From Diadema antillarum (Eukaryota): DNA of 64,000 nucleotides. This document shows positions 11,039 through 64,000 of this stretch, in pieces. Position 1 is the first letter of the stretch, and the number at the start of each line of letters is the position of its first letter. The stretch lies in the NCBI RefSeq assembly GCF_040938485.1, contig NW_027270973.1, positions 186,001 through 250,000 of the forward strand. Direction: 5' to 3'. The position numbers and the translations under genes are program-made. The notes beneath the pieces are model-generated. The model was not told the DNA's origin. It made no database searches and saw nothing but the letters and a program-made list of their open reading frames with translations.

Positions 11039-12102
11039 GTAGCTGATTCGTCGCTCTCACTTCTGCCTCACGTCCCGATGTCTGCTCCTTCCAAGCGACC
11101 TCGTCCTCGACGTAAGACTAGGTTCACCGAATGGCAACTCGAGAGAATGAAGGCCGAGTTGACCAATATCCCGACATCGTTTCCAGGAATAAACTGGCAG
11201 CTACACTGGGCCTGAATGAAGACAGAATACACGTAGGTTTCATTGTCATCTTAAATATAGTATCTGGCATGAAAAGATGTAGTCGACCAATATCTAAGTT
11301 ATTAATTAATTCAAATAATTTCAATTGACTTTTAAATGACACTACATATTAATATTGCTGATAGTCACAGAGTTTCTTAATTTGAAATATCCAGTTTAAT
11401 TATGTCCAATGTAAGCATAACAATGGGGGCAAACGAAACAACCTCTCATTTAAAATTCTACTTGCTTTAACTGAATGAATACTGATTCAGTTTTTATATA
11501 AATCAAGCAGTAATCGAAGATGTGTAATGTCTTAAGAGGCAGAATTGATTAGGCTTTGCATGAGGATGATGACATCAGACTGTTGGTTTTGGGGGCTTGG
11601 CTTAATCCTGATTTCATCATTTTCTTTCCAGGTCTGGTTTCAGAACCGTCGCTCACGTCATCGTCCATCCTCCCTCAAGTCCTTCTCACCTCCCATCGAC
11701 AACCGTCTCGGTGTTGCGGAAAGTGAGACCCACTATCTGCGTAAGAGGAAATGCTTTGCTACAAGCGACGCCATCGACCAAGAGAACACACCGCCGCCCA
11801 AGAAGTTCGCCATCAACGATTCATCGATGTCAGTCGATTTCCTGTCTCATAGCAGCCGATCGTCGGATTCCGGGTCGACTTGCCGCATCAGCGAGGGGCG
11901 TGAAGTCATCAGTTTGCAGCAGACGACATCTCATCGAAAGCAGCAGGGCGCCACCAATCCCTTGATGTCTGTAGAGTTTCCCTCCCGCAGCAGCCGACCG
12001 ACTTCTTCGTATCCATTGCCATACCGTGAAGGGAGTCTCTACCACAACCCGTTGCCATTCTACATGTTTGGCTATCCTTATGTCTTTGTCGTACCTTACT
12101 GA
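11039..12102 (+). pseudogene. pmar1: pmar1-family type B pseudogene, copy B1 (exon 1 about 11039-11232; exon 2 11632-12102)
   Basis: Compared with B2: ATG changed to GTA at 11039; 7-bp deletion (CGACATC) in the homeobox at 11160/11161 causes a frameshift; second eh1-like motif decayed to MSVEFPSR; exon 2 still open. Confidence 0.85.
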
Positions 12103-12459
12103 ACACTGTGATGCTGCCGCACTTTCAAAGCAATTGTAGTCTCTATTACCACAGCCCATCGCCATTCTACATAACGATTTCAGTATAATATATCATCATG
12201 CCATCTTGATCCTGGACATTCGTCGTATAACGAGTCGTAGTGAAACCTGTTCTGTGACGTGGAGCAACGGTTTTGTTTTCGTTATCATAATAATGCACCA
12301 TGACTTTCAGCTTTGAACAGAATTCTGAGTTATGATTGCAAATAAATACATCTGTTTATTACCAAATCATTTTCTTTGGACAAATTTGTCATTCAGGAGT
12401 AATTTTATTAAATTAACATGTATGACCGTTGTGTGGCTGGATGAATTCGTATGAATAGT

Positions 12460-12502: not shown

Positions 12503-14345
12503 ATATAAATGCTTTATCTCTATAGTGAGTGTCTGCATTTTGGTGTTTTTTTATTCTGTTTTTACTGTTTTTTCTCATACACACACACATACACATATAT
12601 ACATTCCATACTGTACATATATTATATAGACATAGTAAAGTAGTCCACGTGTTGTTACTATGATATCAACAATAGAACAGAACATGCTCTCAAAACCACA
12701 GTTTATTTTGATACAATAAAATTGATAATTGGTATCAAAATAAACTGTTGGTATTGACAGCATAAACTTGAGTTTGGTTNNNNNNNNNNNNNNNNNNNNN
12801 NNNNNNNNNNNNNNNNNNNNNNNNNNNNNNNNNNNNNNNNNNNNNNNNNNNNNNNNNNNNNNNNNNNNNNNNNNNNNNNNNNNNNNNNNNNNNNNNNNNN
12901 NNNNNNNNNNNNNCAGAGAGATCAAAGAAAGCAAATGAAAGTGTTTAGTCTTCTTATGCTTGGAAAGGTCATGAAATACACAAGTTTGTCCTCTACTTGC
13001 TACATTCGAACAAACACCAATCTCCACAAGGAAATGGACAAACATAATTCTTTCTAAATGTTCACAGCCAAGGCAATGTAGAATGTCTATACAAGAATAC
13101 TAGTATGCCGCTATGATATGTCTATGAACAATGGCACGGATCTTTTCCACAAATAAGCTCGTGTCCTTCAGACGGAAATCATTTCCCTGTGGCTAAATCG
13201 GAATGACTCGACGCTTTCTTACAAAACTTGAACAGATATCAAGTCGTTATGACATCATTACAAACAATCACATATTCCGTTAAGTAGAGGCTACACGAAC
13301 ATTTAATAATGATTTTGAATTCATATCACACGCATAATACGTATCATAGAGTTTAAAAGGGTTGCCGTAAGATTTACATCTCATTTGTTGAATTACAGCA
13401 CTACGAAGTGAAGTTGTCATTTCGCCTCCTATTTTCAAGGGTTCATAGTGTGCTCTGGGTGAAGCACGTCTCATTGATTTCATCATGAGGCTATAGTCTT
13501 TCTTCACTTTTATCAACATGCATGTATATTTCCATAATTATGAACCTTTCACTTCCATTTATTAGATATAAAAGTTTTCACTTCCTCTAATTTATATTCT
13601 CTCTCTTACAAAAAAGCAGGTTTATACATACAAGCTTACATACACGATACGTTAATATGATTATATACGTACACAATCAATGCATAATGATATGCTTACA
13701 TACGCACATACCTACACCGATACTTAGGACCTACAGGATTGAATGAACATCAATTTTATAGGAGATGATGACCCATCCTCTCAGTACAGCAAATGACCGT
13801 AACCTGTGTCTAGCACTCTCAGAACAATTTTATTCAACTTGACTGATGGAAAGATAACACAATTGACATACTATGGCCATGATTGACAGGGATACTTTAC
13901 GCCAAAATAATCTTCGGCAAAACTTTGATCTCAACTCTTTGATAGGATAGACCTTTCTTCTGTGTGGGTTGGTCAAACAACGAATTTAATTCTATACGAT
14001 CTGCTCCTAAATTTCTTGCATCTTGTCATGAACAAAGACAAACGCGTGATTAGGGATTAGGACCGTAACAATGATGCGCGCGTTTCGAGTGAGAAGAAAG
14101 CCACGAATGACACAGAACTACGTCCTAATCTGTGCCGTTAGTTAATCTCATTGGCCCTTTAAGTTGACCAATCGGACTTTTCCTGAATGGAAACCAATGG
14201 ACTTCTCATCAATAATTGGTCTTAAGGTGAATCAAATTAATAAAGAAGGGGAAAACGGGCACTTTTGGGTTTTTTTTTCTCATTTGGCTCCACACATCAG
14301 GAGTTTTCACCTTATACTGCATTAAGGCTTTTTTCTCTTCCCAAC

Positions 14346-23653: not shown

Positions 23654-24698
23654 ATGGCTGATTCATCGCTCTCGATTCTCTCTCAAGTCTCGACGTCTGT
23701 TCCTACCAAAGGCCTTCGTCGTCGACGTCCGACCGTGTTCACAGAATGGCAGCTCGAGAGGATGAAGGTTGAATTCGACATCGACCGATATCCCGACATC
23801 GTTTCTAGAGAGAAACTGGCTGCCTCACTCGGCCTCGATGAAGACAGAATACAAGTATGTCAGAGCAAAGATGTATAAAATAGATGATGAAGTAAAGTTG
23901 ATTATATCTTTTAATGCTGTTTTAACATTACTGAATGTAGATTGATGGTTCAAATTACAGCTATCACTTCATTGACTGCTATTACAATGGAATACCTGAT
24001 ATAAATCAAAATTTGGGACTCAAACACTCCAATAACAGCAGCGAGAATATGAATGGCCGAGGTTAAGAAGCACGTCCTTTTATATGTTCTCCTCGACATT
24101 TGATGACTTTTTTTTTCTGGCAGTAGTATGTTACGTTTCATGTTAAAAAAATGTTTATGCATGGAGCAAAATGCTAACGTCAGATTTGTTCTTTGTTTAT
24201 CTTCAGGTCTGGTTCCAGAATCGCCGTTCACGCCTTTGTCGAGCTTCACTCAACTCCCTCTCTGCTCGACCAGACGTCAGCTACAACCAGATCGACAGGC
24301 CAACCGACATCAAGGGAACAGAGTCTTCATCCACAAGAAAGCGTAAGCGATCAACGGAATGCGACGTCATCGACCAGGAGAACACACCGCCGCCCAAGAA
24401 GCTCGCCATCAACGACTCACCGATGTCAATCGATTTCCTGTCTCGTAGCAGCCGATCACCGGATTCCTGGTCGACTTTCCGTATTAGCGACGAACGTGAC
24501 ATCCTGAGTTTACAGCAGACGACATCTCATCGAAAGCGGCAGGGCGCCACCAATCCCTTGATGTCTGTAGACTTCCTCTCCCGAAGCAGCCGACCGACTT
24601 CTTCGTATCCATCGCCATACCGTGAAGGGAGTCTCTACCACAGCCCGTCGCCATTCTACATGGTTGGTCATCCGTATGTCTTCGTTGTACCGCACTGA
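23654..24698 (+). CDS. pmar1: pmar1/micro1-family homeobox, copy A2 (exons 23654-23854 and 24207-24698; 230 aa)
   Basis: Intact spliced ORF with GT-AG intron; homeodomain has L16M, A18V and R57C relative to A1; motifs MSIDFLSRSSR and MSVDFLSRSSR. Confidence 0.8.
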
Positions 24699-27696: not shown

Positions 27697-28811
27697 ATGG
27701 CTGATTCGTCGCTCTCACTTCTGCCTCACGTCCCGATGTCTGCTCCTTCCAAGCGACCTCGTCCTCGACGTAAGACTAGGTTCACCGAATGGCAACTCGA
27801 GAGACTGAAGGCCGAGTTCGACATCGACCAATATCCCGACATCGTTTCCAGGAAGAAACTGGCAGCTACACTCGGCCTGAATGAAGACAGAATACACGTA
27901 GGTTTCATTGTCATACGGCATATAACTATCTGGCATGAAAATATGTCGACGAATATTTAAGTTAGGCCTATCAACTAATTGAAATCATTTCAATTGGCGT
28001 TTAAATGACGCTATATTGATATTACTGATAGTCTGAGTTTCTTAGTATGAAATATCCAATTTGATTATGTGAAGCAGCATAATAGCATAATAAGCAGGAC
28101 ATTATAGGAGCAAATAAAGTAACCTCTTATCATCAACAATTCTTCTTGCTTATATATTACCAAATGAATATTGATTCAGCTTTTATACAAAACAAACTGT
28201 AATCGAAGCTGTACAGCTAGTGCTTCAAGAGGCCGAATTGAGCAGGCTTTATATTAGGATAGAAGTATACACTGTTTTTGTTTTTTTGTTAGGTTGATTT
28301 TTAACTAAGTTTAGTCTTGTTTTCTTCATTTTCTTTCCAGGTCTGGTTTCAGAACCGTCGCTCACGTCATCGTCCATCCTTCCTCAAGTCCTCCTCACCT
28401 TCCATCAACAACCGTCTCGACGTTGCTGAAAGTGAACCCGACTGCCTGCGTAAGAGGAAACACTTTGCTACAAGCGACGTCCTCGACCAGGAGAACACAC
28501 CGCCGCCCAAGAAGTTCGCCATCAACGACTCACCGATGTCAGTCGATTTCCTGTCTCGTAGCAGTCGATCACCGAGTTCCTGGTCAATCTCCCACATCAG
28601 CGACGAGCGTGACATCATGAGTTTGCAGCAGACAACATCTCATCGAAAGCAGCAGGGCGCCACCAATCCCTTGATGTCTGTAGACTTCCTCTCCCGAAGC
28701 AGCCGACCGACTTCTTCGTATCCATCGCCATACCGTGAAGGGAGTCTCTACCACAGCTCGTCGCCATTCTACATGGTTGGTCTTCCGCATGTCTTCGTTG
28801 TACCGCACTGA
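27697..28811 (+). CDS. pmar1: pmar1/micro1-family homeobox, type B, copy B2 (exons 27697-27897 and 28341-28811; 223 aa)
   Basis: Homeodomain RPRRKTRFTEWQLERLKAEFDIDQYPDIVSRKKLAATLGLNEDRIH|VWFQNRRSRHRP; same intron position; two MSVDFLSRSSR motifs. Confidence 0.78.
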
Positions 28812-29127
28812 ACGCTGTGATGCTGCCACACTTTCATAGGAGTGACATACCACCCTTCATTACCACAGCCCATCGCTTATATTCTTCATAACGATCCTAA
28901 TGTCATACCACCTTGATCCTGGACATTCGTCGTGACGAGTCGTTGTGAAACCTGTTCTGTGACGTTATCATTATGATGTGAAGCAAAATTTTGAATTATG
29001 GTTGTAAATAAATGTCTATTACCAAATCAACTTCTTGAACAATATACTTTTTCATTGAGGAGTATTTGTTGTGTAATTAGCACGCACGTGTTTCTTGATG
29101 CATTTGTATTGCTTGTATATATATATG

Positions 29128-30049: not shown

Positions 30050-31420
30050 GGGACAAACAAAAGCGAAAAATATAGCTACAAACGGCAGTTTTTTGAGTGT
30101 AAAATATCAAAATTTTAAAGCTCGCTCGCTCCGCTCGCTCGCATTTAATCGCTATGCCATTCTCCTGATGTTGTTGCCAGTGACTGACAGCAGTTGCGCC
30201 CGGTGTGCCCCCTTAATTTCCAAAGGGAAAAATGTAAACGGCAGTTTGGGGACTAAAATGTCAAAATTTTGAAGCTCGCTCGCTTCGCTCGCTCGCATTT
30301 AATCATTACGCCATTCTCCTGATGTTGCAGCCAGTAACTGCCAGCAGTTTTCGCCCGATGCGTTCCCCTTAATTTCCAAAGCGAAAAATATAGCTACAAA
30401 AGGTAGTTTTGGGACTGTAAAATGTCAAAATTTTGAAGCTCGCTCGCTTCGCTCGCTCGCATTTAATAATTATGCAATTCTCCTGATGTTGCTGCTAGTA
30501 ATTGCCAGTAGTTTTCGCCCGGTGCGCCTCCTTAATTTCCAAAGCGAAAAAATACAGCCACAAACGACAGTTTGGGGGACTGTAAAATGTCAAAATTTTC
30601 AAGCTCACTCGCTTTGCTCGCTCGCATTTAATCATTATGCCATTCTCCTGATGTTGCTGCCAGTAACTGCCAGCAGTTTTCGCCCGGTGCGCCCCTTTAA
30701 TTTCCAAAGTGAAAAAATACAGCCACAAACAACACTTTGGGGGACTATAAAATATCAAAATTTTCAAGCTCACTCGCTTCGCTCGCTCGCATTTAATCGT
30801 TATGCCATTCTCCTGATGTTGCTGCCAGTAATTGCCGGCAGTTGCGCCCGGTGTGCTCCCCCCTTAATTTCTAAAGCGAAAAAATACAGCCACAAACGGC
30901 ACTTTGGGGACCGTAAAATGTCTAAATTTTCAAACTCGCTCGCTTTGCTCGCTCGCATTCAATCGTTATGCCATTCTCCTGATGTTGCATGCTGCCAGTA
31001 AGTGCCAGCAGTTGTGCCCGGTGCGCCCCCTTAATTTTCAAATCGAAAAATATAGCTATATACAAACGACAGTTTTAGGACTGTAAAAAGTCAAATTTTT
31101 CAAGCTCACTCGCTTTGCTCGCTCGCATTTAATCGTTATGCCATCCCCCTGATGTTGCTGCCAGTAACTGCCAGCAGTTGCACCCGGTGCGCCCCCCTTA
31201 ATTTCCAAAGTGAAAAAATACAGCCAAAAACGGCAGTTCTTGGACTGTAAAATGTCAAAATTTTCAAGCTCGCTCGCATTTAATCGCTGTACCATTCTCC
31301 TGATGTTGCTGCCAGTGATTCACAGCAGTTGCGCCCGGTGCGGCCCCCCTTAATTTCCAAAGCGAAGAATATAGCTACAAACGGCAGTTTTTGGACTGTA
31401 AAATGTCAAAATTTTCAATG
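30050..31420. repeat. About 165-bp minisatellite (about 8 units) within a G-run-rich non-autonomous element
   Basis: GCTCGCTCGCTTCGCTCGCTCGCATTTAATC..GATGTTGCTGCCAGT.. recurs at about 30120, 30274, 30438, 30603, 30768, 30934, 31103 and 31268. Confidence 0.9.
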
Positions 31421-31835
31421 TAAAAAGATGTCGCCGTGGGAGGGGGAAACCCCCTACCATACCCTACCCCCCCCCCTCGCTTGCTTCACTCCCTCACGAT
31501 CTCATAACCGCTCCCCCTATAGGATCAAATCCTGTCTACGCCGGTGATAGGCCTTCGCAGTGATGTCGCACAATCGGAGCAAGAGCTGAAATACCACGAT
31601 TTAGTCATTCAATGATATATTGTGAATATTTCATTTTCTATTGATTTTTTAAAGAAAACAAAAACAAAAATTTCACCAAAAGTGTGCACCAGATCGCTGA
31701 ATTTCAGGTCTGAAAATGCAAAATCTTCCTCGTGTGGGAAAGGGATACACCCCCCCACACACACACACCCTCCCCCCGTTCGGTCGCTCCGCTCCCTCTC
31801 ATATTTCAAAAACAAAACATGCCTTCATACTTTAA

Positions 31836-32192
31836 AGGGGAAGGCTAGTAACTGATCAGTGGGAATCAGTGGAAATGCTGGGAGATGATTGTTCCAATCC
31901 TTATGGGATTCATTCTAGAGTTCATTGTATATCTATCGTTGTGTGAAAATGATTTGCTTCTGAACGGTCTCATATTCAAGTAATGTGCAGATTAATGCTC
32001 CGTCACTGACCAGGGACGCTAACCTGGAAGCATTAAACTGCACATTACTTGAATATGAGACCATTCTGAAGCAAATCATTTTCACACAACAACAGATTTA
32101 CAATGAACTCTTGAATGAATCCCATAAGGATTGGAACAATCATCTCCCAGCATTTCCACTGATTCCCACTGATCGGTTACTAGCCTTCCCCT
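31836..32192. mobile_element. Kolobok-like foldback MITE
   Basis: AGGGGAAGGCTAGTAAC...GTTACTAGCCTTCCCCT with TTAA on both sides; almost the whole element is palindromic. Confidence 0.8.
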
Positions 32193-33600
32193 TTAAGGTC
32201 TGATTTTCCGCCGCAAGTCATCTCACAAGCAAAAAAAAAAGCAACAACAAGAACAAAAAGTCCTCATATTTTTGCTGCCACTTTCCTCCCACTTTATATT
32301 TCATGCAAAAGAGTGGGACATCCGATCCCTGTAAAGTGTGCGTGTGGGGGGGGGGGGGCACCAAGCTCCCCCCCAAGGCTGCGCCAGTCCGGTTATGGGC
32401 TTGTAATCGTGGTGATGGTGACCATCGGATTTACGCCGTTGCATACACACAAACATATCGCCCATNNNNNNNNNNNNNNNNNNNNNNNNNNNNNNNNNNN
32501 NNNNNNNNNNNNNNNNNNNNNNNNNNNNNNNNNNNNNNNNNNNNNNNNNNNNNNNNNNNNNNNNNNNNNNNNNNNNNNNNNNNNNNNNNNNNNNACGGAA
32601 GAGATCAAAGAAAGCAAATGAAGTGTTTAGCCTTCTTATGCTTGGAAAGGTCGTATGAAATATTAAAGTTTTTCCTGTTGTTAATAGACCTCTGCTCACT
32701 GCATTCGGACACACACCAATCTCCACACTGAAATGGACTCACAAAATTCTTTCTACATGTTCACAGCCAAGGCAATGCATCATTTCAATGCAATATGCCA
32801 GCTACTTATATTGCGGATAATAATCATACTTATACAGGTCGACGAATAACGACACAAATCTTGTCCCCAAAGCTGGTTTTTCAAACTAAGATCATTCCCT
32901 TCTGGCTAAATCAGAGTGACCCAACGCTTTCTTGCAAAACCTGAACAGATGTCAAGTCGTTATGGCATCATTACAAACAAATACATTTCCGTTAGAAGCT
33001 ATACAGATATTATTTAATTGTTAATGTGTTATAAATTAAGTGATAGCGCAGAATACGGATCATAGAGTTTCAAAGAGTTGCTGTAATCTTTTTTTCTTGA
33101 ATCACAGTAGTACTAGGTGAAGTTTTCATTTCGCCTTCTTATTCTCAAGGGTTGCTGGTTTGTCAATTCATTTGTGCGTGAGGACCCCATTAGTGTGTGC
33201 TCTGGGTGAAACACGTCTTATTACTTTTATCACGAGGCTATGTTTGATTCATTTTTTATGTAATTTTACATAATCATGAATCTCACCCTTCCATCTATCA
33301 GACATCTGTCAGATATAAAAGTTTTCACTTCATCCCATTTATATTTTCTCTCTTATCAAAAAGCAGGTTTATACATACAAGCTTACATACATGATCCGTT
33401 GATATAATTTTACGTACATAGCCAAATGCATATATGATATGCTTACATGCGCACACCGATACTTGGGACCTATATGAACATCAATTGTATAGGAGATGAT
33501 GACCCATCCTCTCTGTACAGTAATTGAACATAACCTGTGTCTAGCACTATCAGAACTATTCAACTTGACTGATGGAAAGATAACACGATTGACACTCTAT

Positions 33601-34146
33601 AGGGCTTTTTACACTTGTGTTTCTTAACCCCGGACTTTCTCTGACCCAGGACTATCGTTAGTCCCGTACCAATTTTTTCAGCTTTTTACACTCGCCAATT
33701 AGTCCCGTACTATCTCTTGTCCGGGGCTAAGGAGAAAACTGACCTTTTTACACTCGTATTTCTTAGCCCCGGACTTTCCAGACCACATGAATATTCATAA
33801 TTACGCTGTGTACTGTACACGTACACGCACGCACCGGCAGCACTTGATTGCCTCGTTTCTGATTGGTCAGTGAGGGTCGGACTTCGTCTCCGTCGCTTAG
33901 CCCAGGATTATTTTTTCGTTCTGTTTACACTCACTTGCTTGGCACCGCAATTGCGGTGCTAACCCCTGCTATTTTGCAGGGCCAGATAGTACCGTACTAT
34001 CGGTGGGGCTAGCCCACTTTGGCAAAAACGAGTGTAAACAGAAAGTGGGCTAAGGATAGTCCCGTACCAACGGTGGGGCTAAGGCCCCCCCTTAGCCCCA
34101 CCGATAGTCCGGGGCTAAGCAAAAATTTACAAGTGTAAAAAGCCCT
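33601..34146. mobile_element. PIF/Harbinger-like MITE
   Basis: TIR AGGGCTTTTTACACTTGT / ACAAGTGTAAAAAGCCCT; internal AGCCCCGGACT and AGTCCCGTAC repeats; empty sites at about 5413 and 13872. Confidence 0.75.
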
Positions 34147-34759: not shown

Positions 34760-34973
34760 ATAGCTAATTCAAAATTATTAAATTTGGTTCAGTACTTTTT
34801 ATTCTACGCCAATTCTGAAAATGCAGTCATTGTCAAATTTCGCCGGATTTTTGCGACTTATTAGATAATAATTTGAGTGCGACAAGCGATCCATACGGTG
34901 AATATTGTGTAAGCTCGGTGATCCATGTCAACAAAAGATACAGCTTTCACATTGGGCACAGGCCAGGAAAAAA

Positions 34974-35009
<36 letters not shown>

Positions 35010-35405
35010 TCCCAATATGAAAGCGTTATCTTTTGCTGACATGGATCAACGAGCTTACACAATTCACCGTATGGAACGCGTGTCGCACCCAAATTATTAT
35101 CTCATAAGTCGCAAAAAATTGAAAATGACTGCATTTATAGAAATTGGCGTAGAACAACCAAATTTAATGATTTTGGTATCATGGTCTTCTGCGGAAGATG
35201 TTCTTTCTAATGATGTCAAAAAATATATCACTTTTAGAATGCAAGGTACTGAAAATCCACCGTTCCGCTTTTTTTGGGACACCCGGTATAAACTATTGAT
35301 AGTATACACAGAGATCAGTGTCACACTTTAAAGTCCGTTCCTACCAAGCGACATCGACGCCTGACTATATTCAGCAAATTACAGCTTGAGATTGATGTTA
35401 AAGTG
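34760..35405 (+). pseudogene. Type C pmar1-like exon-1 remnant 3, split by TE insertions
   Basis: CCAAC-ATA-GCTAATTC (mutated ATG) at 34760; after the insertion, 35331-35405 reads KSVPTKRHRRLTIFSKLQLEIDVKV. Confidence 0.65.
34776..35286. mobile_element. Foldback element (arms about 34781-34916 and 35051-35165 around (TG)n) plus a mariner-type right end
   Basis: The arms are reverse complements; the segment ends TTTTTTGGGACACCCGG-TA, a Tc1/mariner-type terminus. Confidence 0.65.
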
Positions 35406-36317
35406 TGGACCAATTACTTTACTCTGCTCGACATTTGCGGTGACCAGGTGCCCCGGGAACATAGAATACCCCCCCCCCCCCAAAAAAAAAAAGAACAGAA
35501 CAGAACAAAACAAAACAAAACAAACAAAAAACAAAAACAAAAACAAAAACAAAAACAAAAAACATGTTGTACCACCAAAATAAAAGAAAAAAAAGTCAAG
35601 AACATTGAATGAATCGGACAGGAATTAAATGTGTTTTGACAACACATTGTTTCTCGTTTATGTTTTTAGGGCAAAAGAGTTGATGATGTTAGTACCCCAT
35701 GCAAATTAGTCAAACTTCGACTATATTCATTTTCTCTGTTGTTTTTTTTTTAAATGACCGTGAATGAGGTTGTATTTAATGACAATTTCACTGTGTCTTT
35801 TTTGGTTTGATTTTTACTGCACTCACCAGAGTCATCTTGAGCATGGGCGAGAATTTGGTTTTGCACTTCATAAAGGTTTTCAGAGATGAATTATTTGGTG
35901 ATTGAATCTGACTGTTAGTCATAAATTCCTAGCGATGCCGAAGTCGGATTTACTTATACGTGCAAAATTACCGTTACACTTAAACGATATACATCAAATT
36001 TCAACAACTATTTGCCATTTTCTGACAATTTTAATTCAACCTAAAGCATGAATCAACGTGATGCTGAATCAAATCAAAATCTGCGCTAATTAAGAGATCA
36101 TATCGAGATAGTATCCAGGATCTGAAAATAGAATCAGGTTCTGTAATAATCGACTGTATTGTTCCTCTACTCCTTTTGTTCCTTGTCGATCTTAGGAAGG
36201 TGGTACAAGGGCAAACTGAAGGGTATTGTTTGGCTTGCAGGCAGCGAACCGACAATCAAACCGCCAATGAACAAAGGAAAAGTCACAGCTCTCTTATAAC
36301 AATGTGTAATTTGCGAC

Positions 36318-36438
36318 ATGGATTAGGACACTCACACTCCCCTTTGAATTGCTGAAGTCTGTGGGCATTCATGAAACTAAAACTTTACCTCATTCGCTAA
36401 TCCTGTCACGCCTATTGGTCGGTTTATTGGACCAATCA
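36318..36438 (+). promoter_or_regulatory. Type A proximal module, copy A3
   Basis: GGATTA 36320, CTTTGAA 36342, TAATCC 36398, ATTGG 36414, CCAAT 36432. Confidence 0.55.
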
Positions 36439-36622
36439 AACAACTTTGCTTGTTTATGGCTTGAGCGAGTGATATTTGGCTTCTCCAATTCATAACCCAC
36501 TTAATCACTGCAAGGCTACTTTGGTAGTATCACCACACGTCATTCAGATTTTCTTGAAGTCAAGTCGCACCTCTGAGGTATTTTCTACAAACCGGCATCT
36601 TTACAAAACCGATCCAATCAGT

Positions 36623-37877
36623 ATGGCTGATTCATCGCTCTCCCTTCTCCCTCAAGTCTCGACGTCCGTTCCTACCAAAGGCCCTCGTCGTCGACGTCCG
36701 ACCATGTTCACCGAATGGCAGCTCGAAAGGCTGAAGGCTGAATTCGACATCGACCGATATCCCGACGTCGTTTCCAGAGAGAAACTGGCTGCCTCAATCG
36801 GCCTCGACGAAGACAGAATACAAGTATGTAAAATCAGGGCTTTGTAAAATAATTGTTAAGCTAAAGATGTTCTTCACCTACTTTGTATGAACGAATAAAT
36901 GCAATCAACCACGGAAGAAGAATCCTGTAAATGATTTCATTTGATCTCATAGATATCTATACATTTATGATAGAGATGTATACATATATCATCAAGTCTA
37001 TATATGTTATAAATTGTTTGAATGACTTTGAACGACAAAATGATAAGACGGTTGTCAAATGTAGCTGCAGTTTACACTTTGGATTTTTTTAACATTTTGA
37101 TTTAGAATGAATATCATATTACCTACGTAAATATAGAACTCAAATATTTTCAGCACCAGCCAGACGGAGCTAGCAATTCATTATTTTTTTCGAAATCTGT
37201 GACTTATTTGTGGTTAATCCGTCGTTGCATAAAAACAATTTGCCATGCCCTCCAACTATTATCTAAATATCCTCAAATACATTGTGTATCAGTTTCATTC
37301 TAGGATTTATGTCCATTACAAGTTCTGTTTCTGCACGAAGCACATAGTTATGATAAAGTCATGTCTTTCTTTTCTTTATCTTCAGGTCTGGTTTCAGAAT
37401 CGCTGTTCGCGCCTTCGTCGAACTTCACTACACTCCCTCTGTACTCGACCAAACATCAGCGACAACCAGATCAACAGGCTAACCGACATCACGGGAGCGG
37501 AGTCTTCATCCAAAGGAAAGCGTAAGCGATCAACCGAATGCGACGTCATCGACCAGGAGAACACACCGCCACCCAAGAAGCTCGCCATCAACGCTTCACC
37601 GATGTCAGTCGATTTCCTGTCTCGTAGCAGCCGATCACCGGATTCTTGGTCGACTTTCCGTATTAGCGACGAGCGTGACATCATGAGTTTACAGCAGACG
37701 ACATCTCATCGAAAGCAGCAGGGCGCCACCAATCCCTTGATGTTTGTAGACTTTCTCTCCCGAAGCAGCCGACCGACTTCTTCGTATCCATCGCCGTACC
37801 GTGAAGGGAGTCTCTACCACAGCGCGTCGCCATTCTACATGTTTGGTCATCCTTGCGTCTTCGTTGTACTGCACTGA
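36623..37877 (+). CDS. pmar1: pmar1/micro1-family homeobox, copy A3 (exons 36623-36823 and 37386-37877; 230 aa; R53C)
   Basis: Intact spliced ORF with a 562-bp divergent intron; helix 3 reads VWFQNRCSR; second motif reads MFVDFLSRSSR. Confidence 0.78.
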
Positions 37878-40166
37878 ACACTGTGATGCTGCCACACTTT
37901 TTATAAGAGTGACTGAGATGTGATGTGTAATATCACATGTTGAGATATTTATTTGACTCTTTGCTGTAAACAAACCCTTCAGCATGCTTCCGACTTCAGA
38001 ACTATGTTTCTGTTATCTGAGACACTCGCGATGTTTCTGACTTGAATTCAGCAACATTGTTGTTTATCATGATCTCTATTAATAAACATTGCCTTTTGAC
38101 ATGTAGATCTTATTCATTTCAAGCTGTTTCATTCCATTGGCATTTGTAGAGTGATCGCATGATTTTGTTTCTTGTTCATGGATGTGTGTACATGTATGAT
38201 AAGTTACACTGTGTTTCCGTGTGTGCGTGAGGCATATGTGTGTGTGTTAGCGTTTATGTGTTAAAGCTCGTAGGTGTGTTTGTGCTTGAGTGAAATTAAA
38301 AGTGAGGTGAAAATGGAGTATCGATGAAACAGTACAGAATAATGACAGAAATTAATCAGGTTAAAAGCAAAAGCAAAAAACAAACAAACAAACTTCCGTG
38401 CGACTTTGAGTAACACGTACGTACATACAATAATCCACAAGCAGCACATACATATCTCATAATATCATGATCATGATGACAGATATTCTTTTTAATTCTT
38501 GCCTTTAACAAATCTACAGCACACAAGGAGTGAAGAAGAAATTTGTTTAACACAAGTTTATAGCACGAGGGTCTGAGGGCATACTCTTAAAAAAAACCCA
38601 CACACTTTGAATTGATGAGTTAACTTTTTCACATAAAAAGTGTAAATTCAAACTCAAGAATATTCCTATAAAACCAGACAAGCATTGATAAGTTATGACC
38701 TTTCAAAGTTTCTCTCTTTTTTTTTCTTGTCGAAAGAGAGATGTAGATCAAAAAGACATGTTTAATGCAAATTAGTTTGAGTAATGTTCTCGTGACGGTA
38801 CGAATCTTTGAATTAGTTGGTGGGTGAAAATTCTATGGATCTTATTTTCTTGTTAATATATGACTTTATAACACATCAGATCAATAGTTGGAAGAAGTTC
38901 AGCTAAAAGATATGAGACAATTCTTTTATTGCAGTGGTAAATCAATCAATTTAACTTAAGGAGAGTCAGTGAAGGTTTATGGTCCTCACGCCATCACCTC
39001 ATAAAGAGTGATCTAAATTGTCAGATATTAGTATGCTCTGATTGCTATCACCATTTTCTGAGCATGTATTGTTATCTTCGAAAGTCTTTATTCTACTTGG
39101 AGGTGGGTTGGAAGGGATTCTAATTCTGATGACACCTTCATTGCAATATTATTTGTTTGATTTTGACAGTCTTTACCAGCGTCAACTTTGACATAGTGGA
39201 ATTTCACTATACTCTTGACAAATATTTGATATAATGTATTAGTGAGAGATTCTGTATCAGTACTAGCCTTGTTTAAATCCTCCATGTACTCAGAATCGCT
39301 ACTATATAGTACAATAATAACATTCGCTCTTAATGCTTGAAATTAACTGTGCCAAATCCGAGCAGAGGAGCTACGTGATTAGAGAGACCAGAAGATAGAG
39401 AGGGCCAAGAATAGTTGGAGACCACAGAGTTAGAGTCAGGAGATCCCCTTTCCTTGTACATCATGCTCCCTTCCATATTAACCAACTAAACTCTATCAAC
39501 GCTGTGAATGTGACGAGGATCTTGGTTGAAATGCCCAAGAGTTAACGAGTTAACTGGTGAACAACGACATGACAAGTTGAGAAACTGTACACCACGACAA
39601 GACAGAACTTTGGTTTACACCAGGCTGGGGTGTAACGAACTCCAAATAGTCAATTGGTGTCATCAGAGATGTTGAAGCGTCCTGTAAGGTTGCCACAACG
39701 TGGACGGCGATGGTGACGAACTGTTTAAGGAAACAGTGAGAGCAGACCGGTCAACGGACGCTCCAGCCCTTGGACTAGCTCGATCGACATGCAGACGAGA
39801 ACCTCTTCCCGCGACCATGCCGATGTCGAGATAAGTGGCCACACCCACTAACATAATTTTCCCTATAAACCAAATCCCTCCCTTTCCCATAGATTAAGAT
39901 GGTAGAATATGAAACGGTCTCCAAAGGTGTAGAAGAGTTAAGTGATCAGTGATGTGTTCAATTGTGTAATAAGAAAAGGAATTTGTTTGTGTTTAAGTAT
40001 TTGGCTCAGACCTACGAGAAGGCAGGTCGGTGAATAAATATGCTGTCAGCAGCATTAATATTATCCATGTAAATTCTATCCTTCCCCCGCATTTTATATT
40101 CACTGTTGTTGTGAAGCAATATTCAGTCTCTTTCTGACGTTTGGAAATTTGTTGATCATTGGTGTC

Positions 40167-40447
40167 CAGAAGTGGATCTAGAGGGGGGGGGGGGGGGGGG
40201 AGGGTTGCAACCCCCCCCCCCCAAAAAAAAAAAAAAAAAAAAAAAATCCGGGGACCATTTTTTTTTTTAACTTGTAATTTTATTTTTTTCTATTTATGTA
40301 TCTATTTTATTTATTATTAATATTATTATTATTATTAATGGTGTTTTAGATGCAAGAAAATGCCTTTTTCACACACAGATTTTCAAAAAATTTTCCCTCG
40401 CATACCACCCCCAACCCCCCATTTATAAAAAGCTAGATCTGCCCCTG
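40167..40447. mobile_element. G/C-run MITE of the CAGGGGCGGATCTAG type
   Basis: CAGAAGTGGATCTAG...CTAGATCTGCCCCTG termini; GTGTC repeated in the flanks. Confidence 0.6.
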
Positions 40448-43400
40448 GTGTCTATGTGATTAGCTAACCGCCGACTAGTACAGAGAGAAGCTAACAGACC
40501 AGACTAACATTTATCCGCCTCTGTACAACATTGGTCGCCCCCTTGAGACAATTAGGGGTGTGGGGGTTGCATATATAACATGTCTCAAAATAAACGCTGA
40601 ATTCTGGCGTGAATTTACCCAGGACCACCAGCAAACCGTAACCCTAAACCACCCCTCTCCCTACTCCAGAAGGTTGCGATATCCTAATTAACACTATGCA
40701 GCATAAAGTGGAATGCAATAATCATATGCTTACAGATATATCAGTAAGAAAGTTTAGTTTTCTACATGATATGTATCAGAACATCAAATGATGAATACAT
40801 CAGCACACAATCTAGACTCTTTAAATTCTCGTGGTTTGATAAGTCTCAGGAATAAAAAAAAAAAAAATCAGATGATTATGTACCAAAAGGATAAAAGACG
40901 AGTAACCAATTGTATCATTTTACTCAGATACTTGTTGAAGTGATCTCTTTAAAAAAAAAAAAAAACTTTTGTTGATATATTTCTGTTTTGAGAAAATGTT
41001 AATCAATGTCAGATGAATAGCTCACTATACATGAAGCGAAATTTCATTATGCGCTGGCTATTCATTGAAGCGTGTGTGGCACGCAATGCGCTGTGATTTT
41101 TCAGATAAGCACATAATGTTTGAGATATGGGGAAAACACACTTCTAAATTCCATATGACTCTGCGCCACAAAACAAACAAAACGTAGCCAGATGTGGATT
41201 TTTAGATAAGGGAAAATTCGATTCTGAAAGAGTCTAATGTTTAAAATGATGTATGATAATTCAATTCAAATGAATTCTCCTAACCTATATAAATATTGGA
41301 AAGAAGGCCCACACTGTGGAAAAGTTTGAACTGAGAAAAGAGGCTCTGAAGTACAGGGTCTATATTCAAGCGCTTAATCTTTCCTACGCCGTGCTACTTG
41401 TGCCATGACTGGGACAAAAAAAAAAAATGTAAACCTCTGTATAGCAACAACAACGAAGGGGTTATGAGGTTAAGCTGAATCTATACATGCTCTATTAACA
41501 CATTCTGTCCATGATAAAACTCAACTTCAAAGCAGTAGCATTATTCTTTCAAAAGTTATAGAGTTGAAAGTGAAGAGTGAGCAAAGGATTGTCAAGAAAT
41601 GAAAAGGAGCCTCTAAGAAAAAAAATAATCACACTACTTTACCAAAAGAGCAAAAGGGGTTGTAGAAAAACTGCTGAAAGCCCACTTTCCCATTCAATTC
41701 ATAATGTCAACCTCAAGAATAATGTAGAAGAATAGCTCTTTCAGAATGTATGGAAACTCAGAATTGACTAGGTTGACCCGTTTCACCTTTTTTAAATCCT
41801 CACGTAAAATCAAGGAACGCCACTTTTTGTTTGCTCTGTGGTGCACGGAAACATATTATAAAAGCGTTTAGAGTGTAAAGTCTTGAAGAATATGCAAACA
41901 TTCTTCTGAAAGCTGCTTGAATCGCCGCCATTTTGTCAGTGCTGCATAGTGCACGTCTCTGTTCAAAAGCTTACTCTTCATATTTTCTTTGGGCCTTAGT
42001 CTTAAAAGTAAGTTTACATTCAATATGTGAATGTGTTTGCCTTCGCTGAACAGACAGACATGTTGTGATCCAATTCCTAAATGTACTTCGGAACTATAGA
42101 CATAGATCAGCAATATTGAACCCGGGAGTACGGCATACTTGGTAAGCATACGAAACGATAAACACACGTGCATGTTACTTGTGCCTGACATGCCTGACAC
42201 GTAGTTTAAAAAAATTTGATGCATGTTTATCAAATAAGCTTAGAATTGATTCTCCTTTGTTTGTTCGTTCATAATTTCTGTTATGATTTTGCTGCTTTTG
42301 TTCAAAATGTACTTGGCATAAACCAACGTCTGTGGACTTCATCACAAATTTGTGTTAAGAGATCGACGTTTAAGGAATTTGGAAACATGAGTAGAACGTG
42401 ATACAAGTGAAACCTCAGTAGGACTTCCTTTTTTACTGTATTAACAGTTGCCTGCTTAATCACTTCTTCTTCAAGACTGAAATAAAAGAGAGTAAATTGC
42501 CATTCATGGTTATTTTTTAACTAGATCTTTTATAGAGTCAGCAGGTACGGGACAAATTTACTCGGTGAGCGTTTCTTTTGAGTGTGCAGCTAATTGGTTC
42601 AGGAAAATAATATCGATTATGTCAGACATGTTCCCTTCCCTAAAATGCATTTCGATGAATTTGAGTCGCTTCAGTTAATAACATGACAACAACATTTTTT
42701 GAATATCAGCAGAGCTGGAAATATTTTGTTGATTATACATGTCAAAGATGAAACTGTTTTACTCATTAAATAGTCAATTATTGATCTTGAATAATTTGAA
42801 ACAGAAAATTTGGCATTCGCTTCAGTTATAGTAGGAGCAAGAAGGTAGGACTATTTTGAAAGAAAGACTGAATGATAAGATGTTTTGTCACTATTCTTTC
42901 TCTTTTAGTTCATTGTTTGAATTATTTTTTATTTGCTTGATTTTTGTGTGTATGTTATTGGGGATGGGGGGGGGGGGCAGTCATCCAGAATTGAGGTAAG
43001 TGTGACATATGTATTCAAATCAACAATGAAGGTTGCTATCCTGGGCGTAAATAATGAAAGCATCCCATCGAAGTTTACACAAATTGTGTTCTCCTCCATT
43101 CAAATGAACAACAATTCATCAAATTTATTAAGCTCGAATTTAAAAGATTTATAGTAAACTTGGTACATAATATTCACACAGATTGTGCGTTAGTAGTTTT
43201 TCCGATATCAATACAAACATAGTAACACCATGCTTCGTATGAACTTCTCTCTTTTTAAATTCTCGTTTAAAAGCTAATATCATATTTCTGCTTGTTCTCG
43301 TTGTTGCGTTTACCGCTGTGTTTTTGTTTTGTTTTGTTTTATTTTGTTTGTTTGTTTAGCTATCGGACAGACAGACACCATGGCAGCGTTTCATCAAATC

Positions 43401-45180
43401 AGTAGCCACAATCTGGAGTGTCCCATTTGTCTAACACTTTTCAACCAACCTAAATCACTGGCATGTTCTCATACCTTCTGCAAAGACTGCTTGGAACGCA
43501 TCTCTCAAACTCAGCCAACTCAACAAGCTGTAACATGCCCTGTATGCAGGAAAGAAACGCCCCTACCCAGTGGAGATGTGAGTAAGTTACAAACAAACGT
43601 TCCACTTAATTCTCTCGTGGATGAAGTGAAAACCAAAAATTCAACATGCACGGTTTGTGTGATGGACGACAAGCCGCCAGTCGTGTCCCACTGTCAGGAC
43701 CGTGGGAAATATATGTGTAAATCATGTGACTCAATACATTCCAGTTGGACACCATTCTCCAGTCACACAGTGGCAGCCATGAGTGAGGTGGTTTCAGGAA
43801 AAGTTCTGGTTGATAGGAGACAAACATGTAAGAAACATCCTAACAATGATGAGTGTTTTTGCACTGAATGTCGGGAGTACGTCTGCTGTGAGTGCGGAAT
43901 ATTACACTTACAAGCAGGGCATCAGATCGAAGAGTCAGCTATACATGAAGAGAAATTGATTAAAAATGTAAAGGAGTTACAAGAAAGGACAAAATCAAAG
44001 AAAACAACCATTGAAAACCACATCGATTTCATAGCCACAAAACGCAATGAAATAACAAACATGATGAGAAAGCTCGATGATGACATCGACAAGACCTACG
44101 AGGAATACGTGCAACGATTGTCAGACATAAGAGAGGCGCTGATATGTCAAGCGAAACGATTGTCTGAAAAATTCGAGAAGGAATTACAAGTCATGGCTGA
44201 CGAGAGTTACCAAACAATCCATCACATGAACGCTATTGGCCATGGGGTGAGCTGGTTTTTTCGCTTGTTTCGTTCCGACAACTGCGGCACTAAAATTTCT
44301 CCACAGCTACATGTAAACAAATAACCAAAAAGGCTACAGGAAAAAGTTCGACACAAACCCTCCTGCAGTATTTTGGTAATTTAGGGGGAAACACTGAACT
44401 TTTTTGTCACTGAGGAGCTGAATATGTACACTTTGCCGTGTACGATATTCATTCGCGAACGATCATGTGATGTATGTTATCCAATCCGAATCGAGAATTA
44501 TTGTTTACGAGTCAAAATGGCCGCCCCCTAAGAGTTCTGTGGCCTGTCGACGCGTCTACGTCGTCTGCTCTGCCGAAACTTTTAAAATGCGTTATTATGC
44601 ATGTAACATCGATGAAGTTTGAAAATTTCACTGCTATGACAAACCTAAGATAGACGAAACCTATTTTGTGTGCCAAAGAGTGGATCAAATTGAGTGGGGG
44701 AGACCGTAAAATCGCAGACCAGAACGAAGTGATTCAGCTGCTCAGCTCAGGGGGACTGACTGCAACCTACGTAGGATAATTTACAGGTTAGTTTACGTGC
44801 GTACAGTCGTAGCAGTCGACACTGCAGTGCAGTCTCTCTCAATATATGCGTAATGTTAATGACCATGATGACTACAAGTACAACGTTATTGATGAACGTT
44901 GCTTGTGTATGTTATAATAGGCGCTACTGCAGTAGCTTAGCCGTTAGCGTGTCTGTTACATTTTAAATAAATTATCTTGAATATCACCTTGGCATGGCAT
45001 AGCGCCGTTATAATGTAGCCTAGATGTAATTTTACATGTTGTTCTATGTACAGCCCAGGTTAGGTTGATGTAGCTGATCGGTGATATTGTTTTGTAAAAT
45101 AAAAATCTTGACACACAGGACTGGATTGAAAAAGGTCTAAACTGCATGTAGATTTATATTTTCATAATCATGGCCATGGA

Positions 45181-62100: not shown

Positions 62101-63139
62101 CGTCGTGATGTTTTCATCGCAACTGATCGACGCATATAAGCACTGAACATTGCTGAATTGCTGCTTCTTTTTAAAATGTATTTATCAGTATCTCCCACAA
62201 AGTGATGCCTATATGTTGTTGTCGTAAAATGAAATAAAAATTGTATTGAATTGACTATATATCATTGTCTCAGGAATAGGACTTTATCCCAAATTAGTGT
62301 GAAACGATCGACGTTTGAGGGATTGGGAGACATTAGTAGAACGTGGAACAGGTCAGACCTCTTTAGAACTTCCCTTTTTACTGTATTAACAGTGGCCTAC
62401 TCAATCACTTCCTCTTCATAACTTAAACGACTGAAACTCCAGAGAGAGGTGGCTATTCAGGTTTATTTTTGAACTTTTTTATAGCGTCTGCAGATAAATG
62501 ACAAATTTACTCAAAGAGCCTTTGTTGTGATGTGCAGCTATAATTGGTTCATGAAATTATGATGTTAGACATATTTCCTTGATTAAAAGATGCATTTCAA
62601 CGAATCTGAGTCCCCGAAAGTTGTTAACATGACAACAACATTTTAGATACATCAGCCGAGTTGGTAATAATTTGTAAACTTTAACTTAGCGCCTAAATAT
62701 GCTTGTAATGGGCAGAACTGTATTAATAGAGTATCCACACCTCAGGATGTTTATATCGGTAAATTTTTACGGCGATGTCAGCGTCCTCTTCCTTGTTCTC
62801 TTTCTCTTGTTGCACGAGTTATTTTTCCCCTGGTGTCAAAGATTTAATTGCTGTATCATTCTTTAAAGAAATAATTCCCACAAAGTTTACTCATTCCCAC
62901 AAATACCAATTAAAGAATCACATTTCACAAGACATGTACCATAATTTAGTAAGACCATCTGTTTCACTATCCTGAGTAGCTCTCAACCGACGTGTTTTCT
63001 TTTTCTATTCTTCAGTCTGTTAACTGCCCATTGCAAGCATAAACTTCAATAATGTTTGGATATACCTTTTGTGTGTTAGAAAAAAATGACTGTATATCAT
63101 TTTTATTTTGTACCATTATGCTCAATGCAGAAAATTCCG

Positions 63140-63245
63140 AATAAATTGAATTGCATTGAACTGAATTGAATTGAAATGAATTAAATTGAGATGAATTGAA
63201 TTGAAATGAATTAAAATTAATTGAAATGAATTAAATGAATTGAAT
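63140..63245 (+). repeat. (GAATT)n tract, probably a LINE 3' tail
   Basis: AATAAA followed by degenerate GAATT repeats, as in the LINE end at 4380-4403. Confidence 0.6.
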
Positions 63246-63823: not shown

Positions 63824-64000
63824 ATGACAACGTTTCATCAAATCAGCAGCGAGAATCTGGAGTGTCCTATCTGTCTGACACTTTTCAACCAACCTAAATC
63901 ACTGACATGTTCTCATATCTTCTGCAAAGACTGTTTGGAACGTATCTCTCAAACTCAGACAAGCCAACAAGCTATAACATGCCCTGTATGCAGGAAAGAA
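63824..64000 (+). CDS. Second TRIM paralog, RING domain only (runs off the window)
   Basis: MTTFHQISSENLECPICLTLFNQPKSLTCSHIFCKDCLERISQTQTSQQAITCPVCRKE; acceptor AG at 63809-63810. Confidence 0.8.
   Translation, partial: MTTFHQISSENLECPICLTLFNQPKSLTCSHIFCKDCLERISQTQTSQQAITCPVCRKE

What the first reader, a model, noticed from the sequence alone, without database searches (positions are those of the whole stretch)
37386..37406. Copy A3 is an otherwise intact gene with Arg53-to-Cys in the recognition helix
Seen: WFQNRC (CGC TGT; a CGT-to-TGT CpG-type change), with ORF, splice sites, promoter module and eh1-like motifs retained (second motif has S to F). Known: R53 is nearly invariant; the same R53C change in HESX1 (R160C), also a PRD-class eh1 repressor, abolishes DNA binding. 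Inference: A3 is either a nascent pseudogene or a non-DNA-binding co-repressor sponge that tempers its paralogs.
Basis: partly seen in the sequence, partly recalled or inferred. Interest (0 to 1): 0.7.

Follow-up and report, generated by a model that had tools for sequence, protein, structure and literature searches.

The report
Pmar1 gene copy with crippled homeodomain
One copy in the multi-copy pmar1/micro1 embryo-patterning gene cluster of the sea urchin Diadema antillarum is intact except for one base change that removes a DNA-gripping arginine; it is most likely a copy that has just begun to die, which is ordinary in this gene family.

Summary
Window 37386-37406 reads VWFQNRC at the start of exon 2 of a two-exon, 230-aa gene (36623-36823 + 37386-37877). 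The gene has an ATG, GT/AG splice sites, an intron at homeodomain position 46/47, and Cys (TGT) at homeodomain position 53.

The window is Diadema antillarum (JBFRCO010000085.1:186001-250000). The gene is one paralogue of the pmar1/micro1/hbox12 paired-class repressor array, and NCBI lists it as 'uncharacterized protein'.

Arg53 is kept in 36 of 38 family members examined. The only other exception is a paralogue on another contig with R53H that has also lost its start codon. All other type-A copies carry CGT at this codon, including a D. setosum copy with an otherwise identical 29-mer, so the change is a single C>T at a CpG.

Unitigs of one public DNA run reproduce the TGT. No RNA run was found, and whether the T is fixed is unknown.

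A3's unique changes (10 nonsynonymous : 5 synonymous) and branch length match those of its sister copy. Selection tests therefore cannot separate early decay from retained function.

Best reading (0.6): a recent loss-of-function or hypomorphic copy tolerated by redundancy. The 'Groucho sponge' idea has no specific support (~0.07). Other windows of this scan already noted birth-and-death in this cluster.

The parts
36240..36622 (+). Proximal promoter and 5' UTR of A3. It holds GGATTA (36320), a TCF/LEF-type CTTTGA (36342), TAATCC (36398) and CCAAT/ATTGG boxes (36414, 36426, 36432, 36485). A 7-9 bp deletion near 36519 sets it apart from the other type-A copies.
   Evidence: MAFFT alignment with eight other type-A copies; motif scan; BLASTN similarity 35289-36832 to A1 and 36035-36869 to A2. 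The motif functions are inferred from PMC5370098, not tested here.
36623..36823 (+). A3 exon 1: ATG, N-terminal arm and homeodomain positions 1-46 (HD1 at 36686).
   Evidence: Gene model; Pfam Homeodomain E 3.2e-11, profile positions 1-45; identical to database protein P0001.
36824..37385 (+). Intron (562 nt, GT...AG) at homeodomain position 46/47. It aligns along its whole length only with the paralogue P0007 (L004).
   Evidence: (36157-38886 aligns with L004 9551-12287 at 84.2% over 2829 nt).
37386..37877 (+). A3 exon 2: homeodomain positions 47-60 (37386-37427), the repressor tail and the stop codon.
   Evidence: homologues found with this exon as query.
37404..37406 (+). Codon TGT = Cys at homeodomain position 53. 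The ancestral codon was CGT = Arg.
   Evidence: X1 unitig covering 37306-37546 with 0 differences.
37518..37529 (+). KRKR, a basic nuclear-localisation-like motif, retained.
   Evidence: conserved in the family alignment. An NLS is named as a conserved Pmar1 feature in bioRxiv 10.1101/2022.03.03.482868.
37602..37631 (+). First eh1-type motif MSVDFLSRSS, intact.
37740..37769 (+). Second eh1-type motif MFVDFLSRSS, with Ser>Phe at motif position 2 (TCT>TTT).
   Evidence: The same position is Cys in P0015, and the first motif of P0039 has Phe at its position 2.
37848..37874 (+). C-terminal conserved motif HPCVFVVLH (family consensus HPYVFVVPH). The Tyr>Cys is shared with sister copy P0007. The Pro>Leu is unique to A3.

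Best explanation
- **What A3 is.** A3 is one paralogue of the type-A subfamily in the pmar1/micro1/hbox12 homeobox array of Diadema antillarum. In other sea urchins, proteins of this family are short-lived paired-class repressors. They bind DNA through a Q50 homeodomain, recruit a co-repressor through two eh1-type motifs, and switch off hesC to start micromere/skeletogenic specification.
- **What happened.** After A3 split from its sister copy (P0007, 76 kb away on the same contig), one C>T transition turned homeodomain Arg53 into Cys.
- **Inferred step 1.** By analogy with other homeodomains, Cys53 strongly weakens or abolishes DNA binding. A3 would then contribute little or nothing to repression.
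- **Inferred step 2.** The defect is tolerated because a dozen or more redundant copies supply the dose. A3 would be at the earliest, missense-only stage of the birth-and-death turnover typical of this array. It may also still be a segregating allele.
- **What is shown.** Family identity, intact gene structure, the derived state of the codon, and its near-invariance elsewhere are shown.
For: **Family and organism**
- Exon 2 finds P0001 (100% identity, D. antillarum) and named Micro1/Pmar1 proteins at E 1e-23 to 1e-17.
- Pfam Homeodomain matches exon 1.

**Arg53 conservation**
- Arg53 is present in 36 of 38 family members.
- The only other exception is P0008 with R53H. Its native ATG is mutated to TTT, so it is an independently decaying copy.
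- The ancestral codon was CGT in all other type-A copies and in a D. setosum copy with the same 29-mer.

**Birth and death in the array**
- B1 (11039-12102) has GTG in place of ATG, a frameshift and stop codons.
- P0017 is truncated.
- A2 carries R57C.

**Constraint**
- A3 has the most unique nonsynonymous hits in the homeodomain plus eh1 motifs of the nine type-A copies (4, against 0-3 for the others).

**Literature**
- pmar1 arrays of 10-20 copies contain 'a few likely pseudogenes' per species (bioRxiv 10.1101/2022.03.03.482868).
- Copy number varies from 6 to 22 between P. lividus individuals, and some copies may be pseudogenes (PMC5370098).

**Reads**
- The base is reproduced by an X1 unitig at depth 14.6.
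Against: - A3 has no stop, frameshift, splice defect or loss of promoter motifs.
- A3's terminal branch equals that of its sister P0007 (0.054 against 0.051).
- Its unique changes are 10 N: 5 S, against 53 N: 22 S pooled for the other copies (Fisher p = 0.76). The excess of homeodomain hits is not significant (p = 0.19).
- Pairwise dN/dS for A3 (0.44-0.77) lies within the family range of 0.38-1.15.
- Loss of DNA binding is inferred from other homeodomains and was not measured.
- Expression and population frequency are unknown. No RNA run was found, and only contigs could be laid.
Confidence: 0.6

Rival explanations
1. A3 is still a working repressor, though a weaker one. Cys53 lowers DNA affinity but does not abolish it, and A3 still adds to the total Pmar1 dose.
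For: - Everything apart from Cys53 is intact: ORF, splice sites, NLS, first eh1 motif and promoter motifs.
- There is no rate acceleration against sister P0007.
- The other homeodomain changes are conservative (V7M, I28V, L38I, A59T).
- Ser>Phe at eh1 position 2 occurs naturally elsewhere in the family (P0039).
Against: - Arg53 is kept in 36/38 family members. The only other loss is in a copy without a start codon.
- The same substitution in HESX1 behaves as a loss-of-function allele.
Confidence: 0.2
2. A3 is a selected non-DNA-binding decoy. It is expressed with its paralogues, cannot bind DNA, and titrates Groucho/TLE through its eh1 motifs, so it tempers the double-negative gate.
For: - The promoter module, the NLS and at least one eh1 motif are retained.
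Against: - A3 is one copy among at least 14 in this assembly, so its share of the protein would be small against an abundant co-repressor.
- The second eh1 motif and the conserved C-terminal motif are themselves altered.
- No Cys53 copy appears among the D. setosum proteins.
- There is no selection signature.
- Cooperative dimerisation of paired-class homeodomains depends on DNA (own knowledge), so heterodimer poisoning is unlikely.
- Expression has not been shown.
Confidence: 0.07
3. The T at 37404 is an assembly or consensus error, or a private variant of the sequenced animal, and not a property of the gene copy.
For: - It is a single base in a multi-copy family.
- The only run that clearly reproduces it (X1) may be the assembly's own sample.
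- In the second sample (X2), A3-specific unitigs exist (35900-36186 and 37148-37298, 0 differences), but none listed covers 37404. The listed X2 piece over that site matches paralogue P0007.
Against: - An X1 unitig at depth 14.6 spans 37306-37546 with zero differences. That depth matches the other A3-specific unitigs (12-15), so the T is carried by many reads.
- NCBI's own gene model gives the same protein (P0001).
Confidence: 0.05

Closest known systems
Pmar1 / Micro1 / Hbox12 paired-class homeodomain repressors of echinoids (S. purpuratus pmar1, H. pulcherrimus micro1, P. lividus hbox12)
   Same: - Q50 paired-like homeodomain with an intron at 46/47.
- KRKR basic motif, two SVDFLSRSS eh1-type motifs and a C-terminal HPYVF motif.
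- Tandem multi-copy array with subfamilies that have distinct promoters.
- A TCF-type motif upstream.
- 39-51% identity over exon 2 (PMC5370098; PMC4709884).
   Different: - This is a Diadema copy of a lineage-specific subtype.
- The first residue of both eh1 motifs is Met, not Phe.
- Homeodomain position 53 is Cys.
- Function and expression in Diadema are untested.
HESX1 p.R160C (homeodomain R53C), septo-optic dysplasia allele
   Same: The same residue change at the same homeodomain position, in a paired-class repressor that uses an eh1 motif and Groucho/TLE. That R160 is homeodomain position 53, and the original EMSA result (Dattani et al. 1998), come from my own knowledge.
   Different: - HESX1 is a single-copy vertebrate gene in which the allele is pathogenic when homozygous.
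- A3 is one of many redundant copies.
- The two homeodomains are not orthologous.
- No binding assay exists for A3.
Decayed pmar1 array of Heliocidaris erythrogramma, and the 'few likely pseudogenes' in L. variegatus and H. tuberculata arrays (bioRxiv 10.1101/2022.03.03.482868)
   Same: Loss of homeodomain integrity in members of a tandem pmar1 array, with an overexpression assay available as a functional test.
   Different: In H. erythrogramma all copies are heavily altered, with about half of the homeodomain residues changed. In A3 a single critical residue is changed, and most sister copies look intact.
Non-DNA-binding homeodomain cofactors such as HOPX (from memory, not checked here)
   Same: A homeodomain fold that has lost DNA-contact residues and acts through protein partners. 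This is the model for the 'sponge' reading.
   Different: HOPX is an old, conserved, single gene under selection. A3 is a young paralogue, and no evidence points to a selected new role.

Membership tests
pmar1/micro1/hbox12 family | Paired-like homeodomain with Gln50 and significant similarity to named Pmar1/Micro1 proteins | tested here: met
   Pfam Homeodomain E 3.2e-11 on exon 1. WFQN in helix 3. Hits to Micro1/Pmar1-related (Scaphechinus, E 1.5e-23), H. pulcherrimus homeobox protein Q5TLG4, and S. purpuratus 'paired class homeodomain repressor'.
pmar1/micro1/hbox12 family | Two-exon structure with the intron inside the homeobox (position 46/47) | tested here: met
   GT at 36824 and AG at 37384-37385. 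All five copies in the window have the same structure.
pmar1/micro1/hbox12 family | Two eh1-type repression motifs and a basic NLS in the C-terminal half | tested here: met
   MSVDFLSRSS at 37602-37631, MFVDFLSRSS at 37740-37769 and KRKR at 37518-37529. The second motif carries Ser>Phe. Groucho binding was not tested.
pmar1/micro1/hbox12 family | Tandem multi-copy cluster | tested here: met
   Five copies in the window. Further copies on the same contig at 116, 146, 286, 291 and 299 kb.
pmar1/micro1/hbox12 family | Transient early expression (micromeres) and repression of hesC | not testable with these tools
   No RNA run holds the stretch. Only a conserved TCF-type and Otx-type motif module was seen upstream.
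DNA-binding-competent homeodomain | Arg at position 53 (phosphate contact of helix 3), together with W48, F49 and N51 | tested here: not met
   W48, F49 and N51 are present. Position 53 is Cys. Arg53 is present in 36/38 relatives.
Classical pseudogene | Disabling lesion: frameshift, premature stop, or lost start or splice site | tested here: not met
   Intact 230-aa ORF, ATG and GT/AG. Compare B1 (GTG start, frameshift, stops) and the P0008 copy (ATG>TTT).
Classical pseudogene | Relaxed selection on its own lineage (omega near 1, faster than sister copies) | tested here: inconclusive
   10 N: 5 S unique changes (omega about 0.6), not different from the other copies or from neutrality. The branch length equals that of sister P0007.

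The most novel reading that the evidence does not exclude
Cys53 (and perhaps the R53H and R57C changes in other Diadema copies) marks a selected class of non-DNA-binding Pmar1 decoys. These would be co-expressed with the active copies and would buffer the dose of the double-negative gate by competing for Groucho/TLE or for degradation machinery.
Probability: 0.06. Interest if true: 0.6.

Novelty: new member of a known kind. Interest (0 to 1): 0.2.

Why it matters
- **Main value.** pmar1 sits at the top of the best-studied developmental gene network, sea-urchin micromere specification. Its multi-copy, fast-turnover arrays make it hard to say which copies count. A copy that is intact except for one DNA-contact residue is a clean natural test case for how such arrays lose members. 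It also offers a natural 'DNA-binding-dead' control for overexpression assays in Diadema, an early-branching euechinoid where the gate has not been studied.
- **If it proved to be a selected decoy.** That would add a dosage-buffering layer to the double-negative gate.
- **As it stands.** It is an expected by-product of redundancy and mainly of annotation value. The NCBI 'uncharacterized protein' is a pmar1 paralogue that probably does not bind DNA normally.

Tried and rejected
1. **P0008 as an A3 allele or haplotig.** I tested whether the R53H protein P0008 is an allele of A3. It is not: only 82-87% nucleotide identity, on another contig. It is a separate paralogue that has also lost its ATG.
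2. **Protein and CDS trees.** Type-A copies form an unresolved star, probably because of gene conversion. No orthologue of A3 in D. setosum could be named.
3. **Selection tests.** Pairwise NG86 dN/dS and counts of unique changes gave no signal specific to A3.
4. **Reads.**
   - Only Logan unitigs were available, and both caps are now used.
   - The divergent piece over 37207-37440 in X1 and X2 looked at first like a second A3 allele. Its differences (15 other letters, 5 gap letters) fit paralogue P0007, which is 91.5% identical there with 14 mismatches and 3 gap openings.
   - So it says nothing about polymorphism at 37404.
   - 201 rows of the difference table were hidden.
5. **Metagenome scan.** An exact scan of JGI metagenome contigs for the A3 29-mer, allowing C or T at the site, gave no hit.
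6. **CpG hypermutability.** Exon CpG observed/expected is 1.15-1.37. The change is a CpG transition, but a methylation-driven hotspot is not supported.
7. **Papers.** The HESX1 R160C mouse paper (PMC2590837) is not held, and a homeodomain review gave no passage on position 53. The EMSA result and the phosphate-contact role of Arg53 therefore rest on my own knowledge.
8. **Joined model.** The joined two-exon model was never typed into a search tool. Exons were searched by reference, and the identical stored database protein P0001 was used for the PDB search. Exons were joined only inside local scripts for translation and codon counts.

Full report
**1. What is there**

Window 36200-38600 holds a two-exon gene on the + strand.
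- Exon 1 is 36623-36823. It starts with ATG and is followed by the donor GTATGT.
- The intron is 562 nt.
- Exon 2 is 37386-37877. It follows the acceptor TTCAG and ends in TGA.
- The product has 230 residues.
- Positions 37386-37406 read GTC TGG TTT CAG AAT CGC TGT = VWFQNRC.
- Counting the homeodomain from RRRRPT (residue 22), the Cys is residue 74 = homeodomain position 53, codon 37404-37406.

**2. Identity**

- Pfam finds Homeodomain in exon 1 (E 3.2e-11).
- Exon 2, searched by reference, finds a 100% identical NCBI protein of Diadema antillarum (P0001, 'uncharacterized protein').
- It also finds about 19 further Diadema antillarum and D. setosum paralogues at 58-86% identity.
- Named relatives follow: Micro1/Pmar1-related protein of Scaphechinus, H. 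pulcherrimus homeobox protein Q5TLG4, and S. purpuratus and H. erythrogramma 'paired class homeodomain repressor'.
- The window is JBFRCO010000085.1:186001-250000.

The window holds five copies, all on the + strand:

| Copy | Start in window | State |
|---|---|---|
| A1 | 7387 | intact |
| B1 | 11039 | dead: GTG in place of ATG, a frameshift and stop codons in exon 1 |
| A2 | 23654 | carries R57C |
| B2 | 27697 | intact |
| A3 | 36623 | carries R53C |

More copies lie on the same contig at about 116, 146, 286, 291 and 299 kb. A second set lies on contig JBFRCO010000528.1.

All copies share these features:
- a Q50 paired-like homeodomain;
- the intron at 46/47;
- a KRKR motif;
- two SVDFLSRSS motifs, the 'eh1' motifs that the literature says are needed for Pmar1 repression (PMC4709884);
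- a C-terminal HPYVF motif.

**3. How unusual Cys53 is**

- Arg is kept at position 53 in 36 of the 38 family members where the position can be read.
- The exceptions are A3 (Cys) and P0008 (His).
- P0008 is not an allele of A3. It is 82-87% identical and lies on another contig. Its native start codon is mutated from ATG to TTT, and NCBI's model rescues it with a distant upstream exon. The only other loss of Arg53 is thus in a copy that is independently decaying.
- In all eight other type-A copies for which I extracted DNA, the first base of the codon is C, so the ancestral codon was CGT.
- A D. setosum copy (L006) carries the same 29-mer as A3 with CGT.
- The change is a single C>T at a CpG. 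The R53H and R57C changes are also CpG transitions.
- CpG is not depleted in these exons (observed/expected 1.15-1.37). I would not invoke methylation-driven hypermutation.

**4. Is the base real, and is the gene expressed?**

Only Logan unitigs could be laid.
- In run X1 (organism A), a 241-nt unitig at depth 14.6 covers 37306-37546 without any difference. Other A3-specific unitigs have depth 12-15.
- X1 may be the sample behind the assembly, so this rules out a consensus slip but is not independent.
- In X2 (another sample and study), A3-specific unitigs exist (35900-36186 and 37148-37298, no differences).
- The listed X2 piece across codon 53 has 15 differences and 5 gap letters. That fits paralogue P0007, which is 91.5% identical there with 14 mismatches and 3 gap openings. 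It is not an A3 allele.
- Whether the T is fixed is unknown.
- No RNA run holds the stretch, so expression is unknown.
- An exact scan of metagenome contigs found nothing.

**5. Is A3 decaying?**

- A3's closest relative is P0007. It is the only copy whose intron aligns with A3's from end to end (36157-38886, 84.2%). It has the lowest dS against A3 (0.096) and shares the Tyr>Cys change in HPYVF.
- Since the two split, A3 has 10 unique nonsynonymous and 5 unique synonymous changes. P0007 has 10 and 4.
- Terminal branches in the CDS tree are 0.054 for A3 and 0.051 for P0007.
- Against the other eight copies pooled (53 N: 22 S), A3 is no different (Fisher p = 0.76).
- A3 has the most unique replacements inside the homeodomain and eh1 motifs. 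These are I28V, L38I and R53C in the homeodomain and S>F in motif 2, four in total against 0-3 for the others. The excess is not significant (p = 0.19).
- Pairwise dN/dS across type-A copies is high throughout (0.38-1.15). A3's values (0.44-0.77) are ordinary.

These tests cannot tell early decay from continued function. If A3 is dying, it has only just started.

**6. The rest of the gene**

- The promoter is homologous to those of A1 and A2.
- It keeps an Otx-type GGATTA (36320) and TAATCC (36398), a TCF/LEF-type CTTTGA (36342) and a palindromic pair of CCAAT boxes (36414-36436) in register. It is 7-9 bp shorter near 36519.
- A TCF motif near the start site, and dependence on beta-catenin, are reported for the micromere-specific family members of P. 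lividus and S. purpuratus (PMC5370098).
- The Ser>Phe in the second eh1 motif falls at a position that also varies elsewhere: Cys in P0015, and Phe in the first motif of P0039. It is probably tolerated.

**7. Interpretation**

- Established homeodomain knowledge says Arg53 contacts the DNA backbone and is among the most conserved positions. This comes from my own knowledge of the engrailed and paired co-crystal literature.
- The same change in HESX1 (R160C) is a recessive loss-of-function allele. [quoted passage not shown]
- pmar1 arrays are known to vary in copy number between individuals (6-22 in P. lividus). They are also known to contain a few likely pseudogenes (PMC5370098; bioRxiv 10.1101/2022.03.03.482868).
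- The most economical reading is a recent loss-of-function or strongly hypomorphic copy, tolerated by redundancy (0.6).
- A still-useful hypomorph is the main rival (0.2).
- The co-repressor sponge idea has one precedent under overexpression: HESX1 R159W raised reporter activity to 153%. Here it has no specific support (about 0.07). A3 is one of at least 14 copies, its own eh1 and C-terminal motifs are altered, no Cys53 copy is seen among the D. setosum proteins, and expression is unknown.
- An error or private variant remains possible (0.05).

**8. Novelty**

The family, its tandem arrays, its copy-number variation and its pseudogenes are all known. The Diadema array has not been described in the papers I could search. 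This copy is annotated only as 'uncharacterized'. Notes from other windows of this scan already describe the cluster as pmar1-like with birth and death. My independent checks agree. I rate this a new member of a known kind, of low to moderate interest.

**9. Procedure**

For the PDB search I used the stored database protein P0001, which is identical to the joined model. The top PDB hits were DUX4, aristaless, ALX4 and Pax6 homeodomains, and every homeodomain in the alignments printed (DUX4 HD1 and HD2) has Arg at position 53. Exons were joined only inside local scripts.

Noticed in passing
window 24237-24239 (copy A2, 23654-23854 + 24207-24698): A2 carries Arg>Cys at homeodomain position 57 (CGT>TGT, SRLCRAS). 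No other family member examined has this change. It is another CpG transition that removes a basic residue at the end of helix 3.
   Followed up: partly
L001:13043-13243 + 13663-14154 (JBFRCO010000528.1; protein P0008): A paralogue on another contig has Arg53>His (CGT>CAT), and its native ATG is mutated to TTT. NCBI's model rescues it with a far upstream first exon (MAK...). It is likely a pseudogene annotated as a gene.
   Followed up: partly
window 11039-12102 (copy B1): A type-B copy with GTG in place of the start codon, a frameshift and two stop codons in exon 1. Its exon 2 is still open. It is a clear pseudogene beside intact neighbours.
   Followed up: partly
window 33601-34146: A roughly 546-bp insertion in the A3 unit relative to the A1 unit: the alignment to A1 breaks at 33600/34147 (A1 5415/5413). 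The piece is 96.5% identical, in reverse orientation, to L001:8100-8666 on another contig. It looks like a young mobile element about 2.5 kb upstream of A3.
   Followed up: no
window 38273-43556 and 58855-64000: The DNA downstream of A3 is repeated about 20 kb further on at 74-86% identity. This is a segmental duplication that does not include a homeobox copy.
   Followed up: no
window 30060-31418; 31825-32203; 34770-35175: A tandem satellite of about 165-bp units (80-84% identity between units) lies upstream of the A3 unit. Two stretches match their own reverse complement (90% and 74%), so they are palindromic elements.
   Followed up: no
window 35900-37546 in run X1: A3-specific unitigs sit at depth 12-15, while the unitig matching paralogue P0007 sits at about 24. 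A3 may be present on only one haplotype of that animal, or be heterozygous throughout. That would fit the copy-number variation reported for this family in P. lividus.
   Followed up: no
window 37540-37913 against 28474-28846 (B2) and 11765-12125 (B1): The repressor tail of A3 is 89-91% identical to the type-B copies, which is more than to A1 (81%) or A2 (87%) over the longer alignments that include it. The conversion tract stops short of the homeodomain, so it has not 'repaired' codon 53.
   Followed up: partly
P0017 (D. antillarum, contig JBFRCO010000528.1): The annotated protein ends at 192 aa, inside the second eh1 motif (…MSVDFLS). It is a truncated copy, or a model cut short.
   Followed up: no
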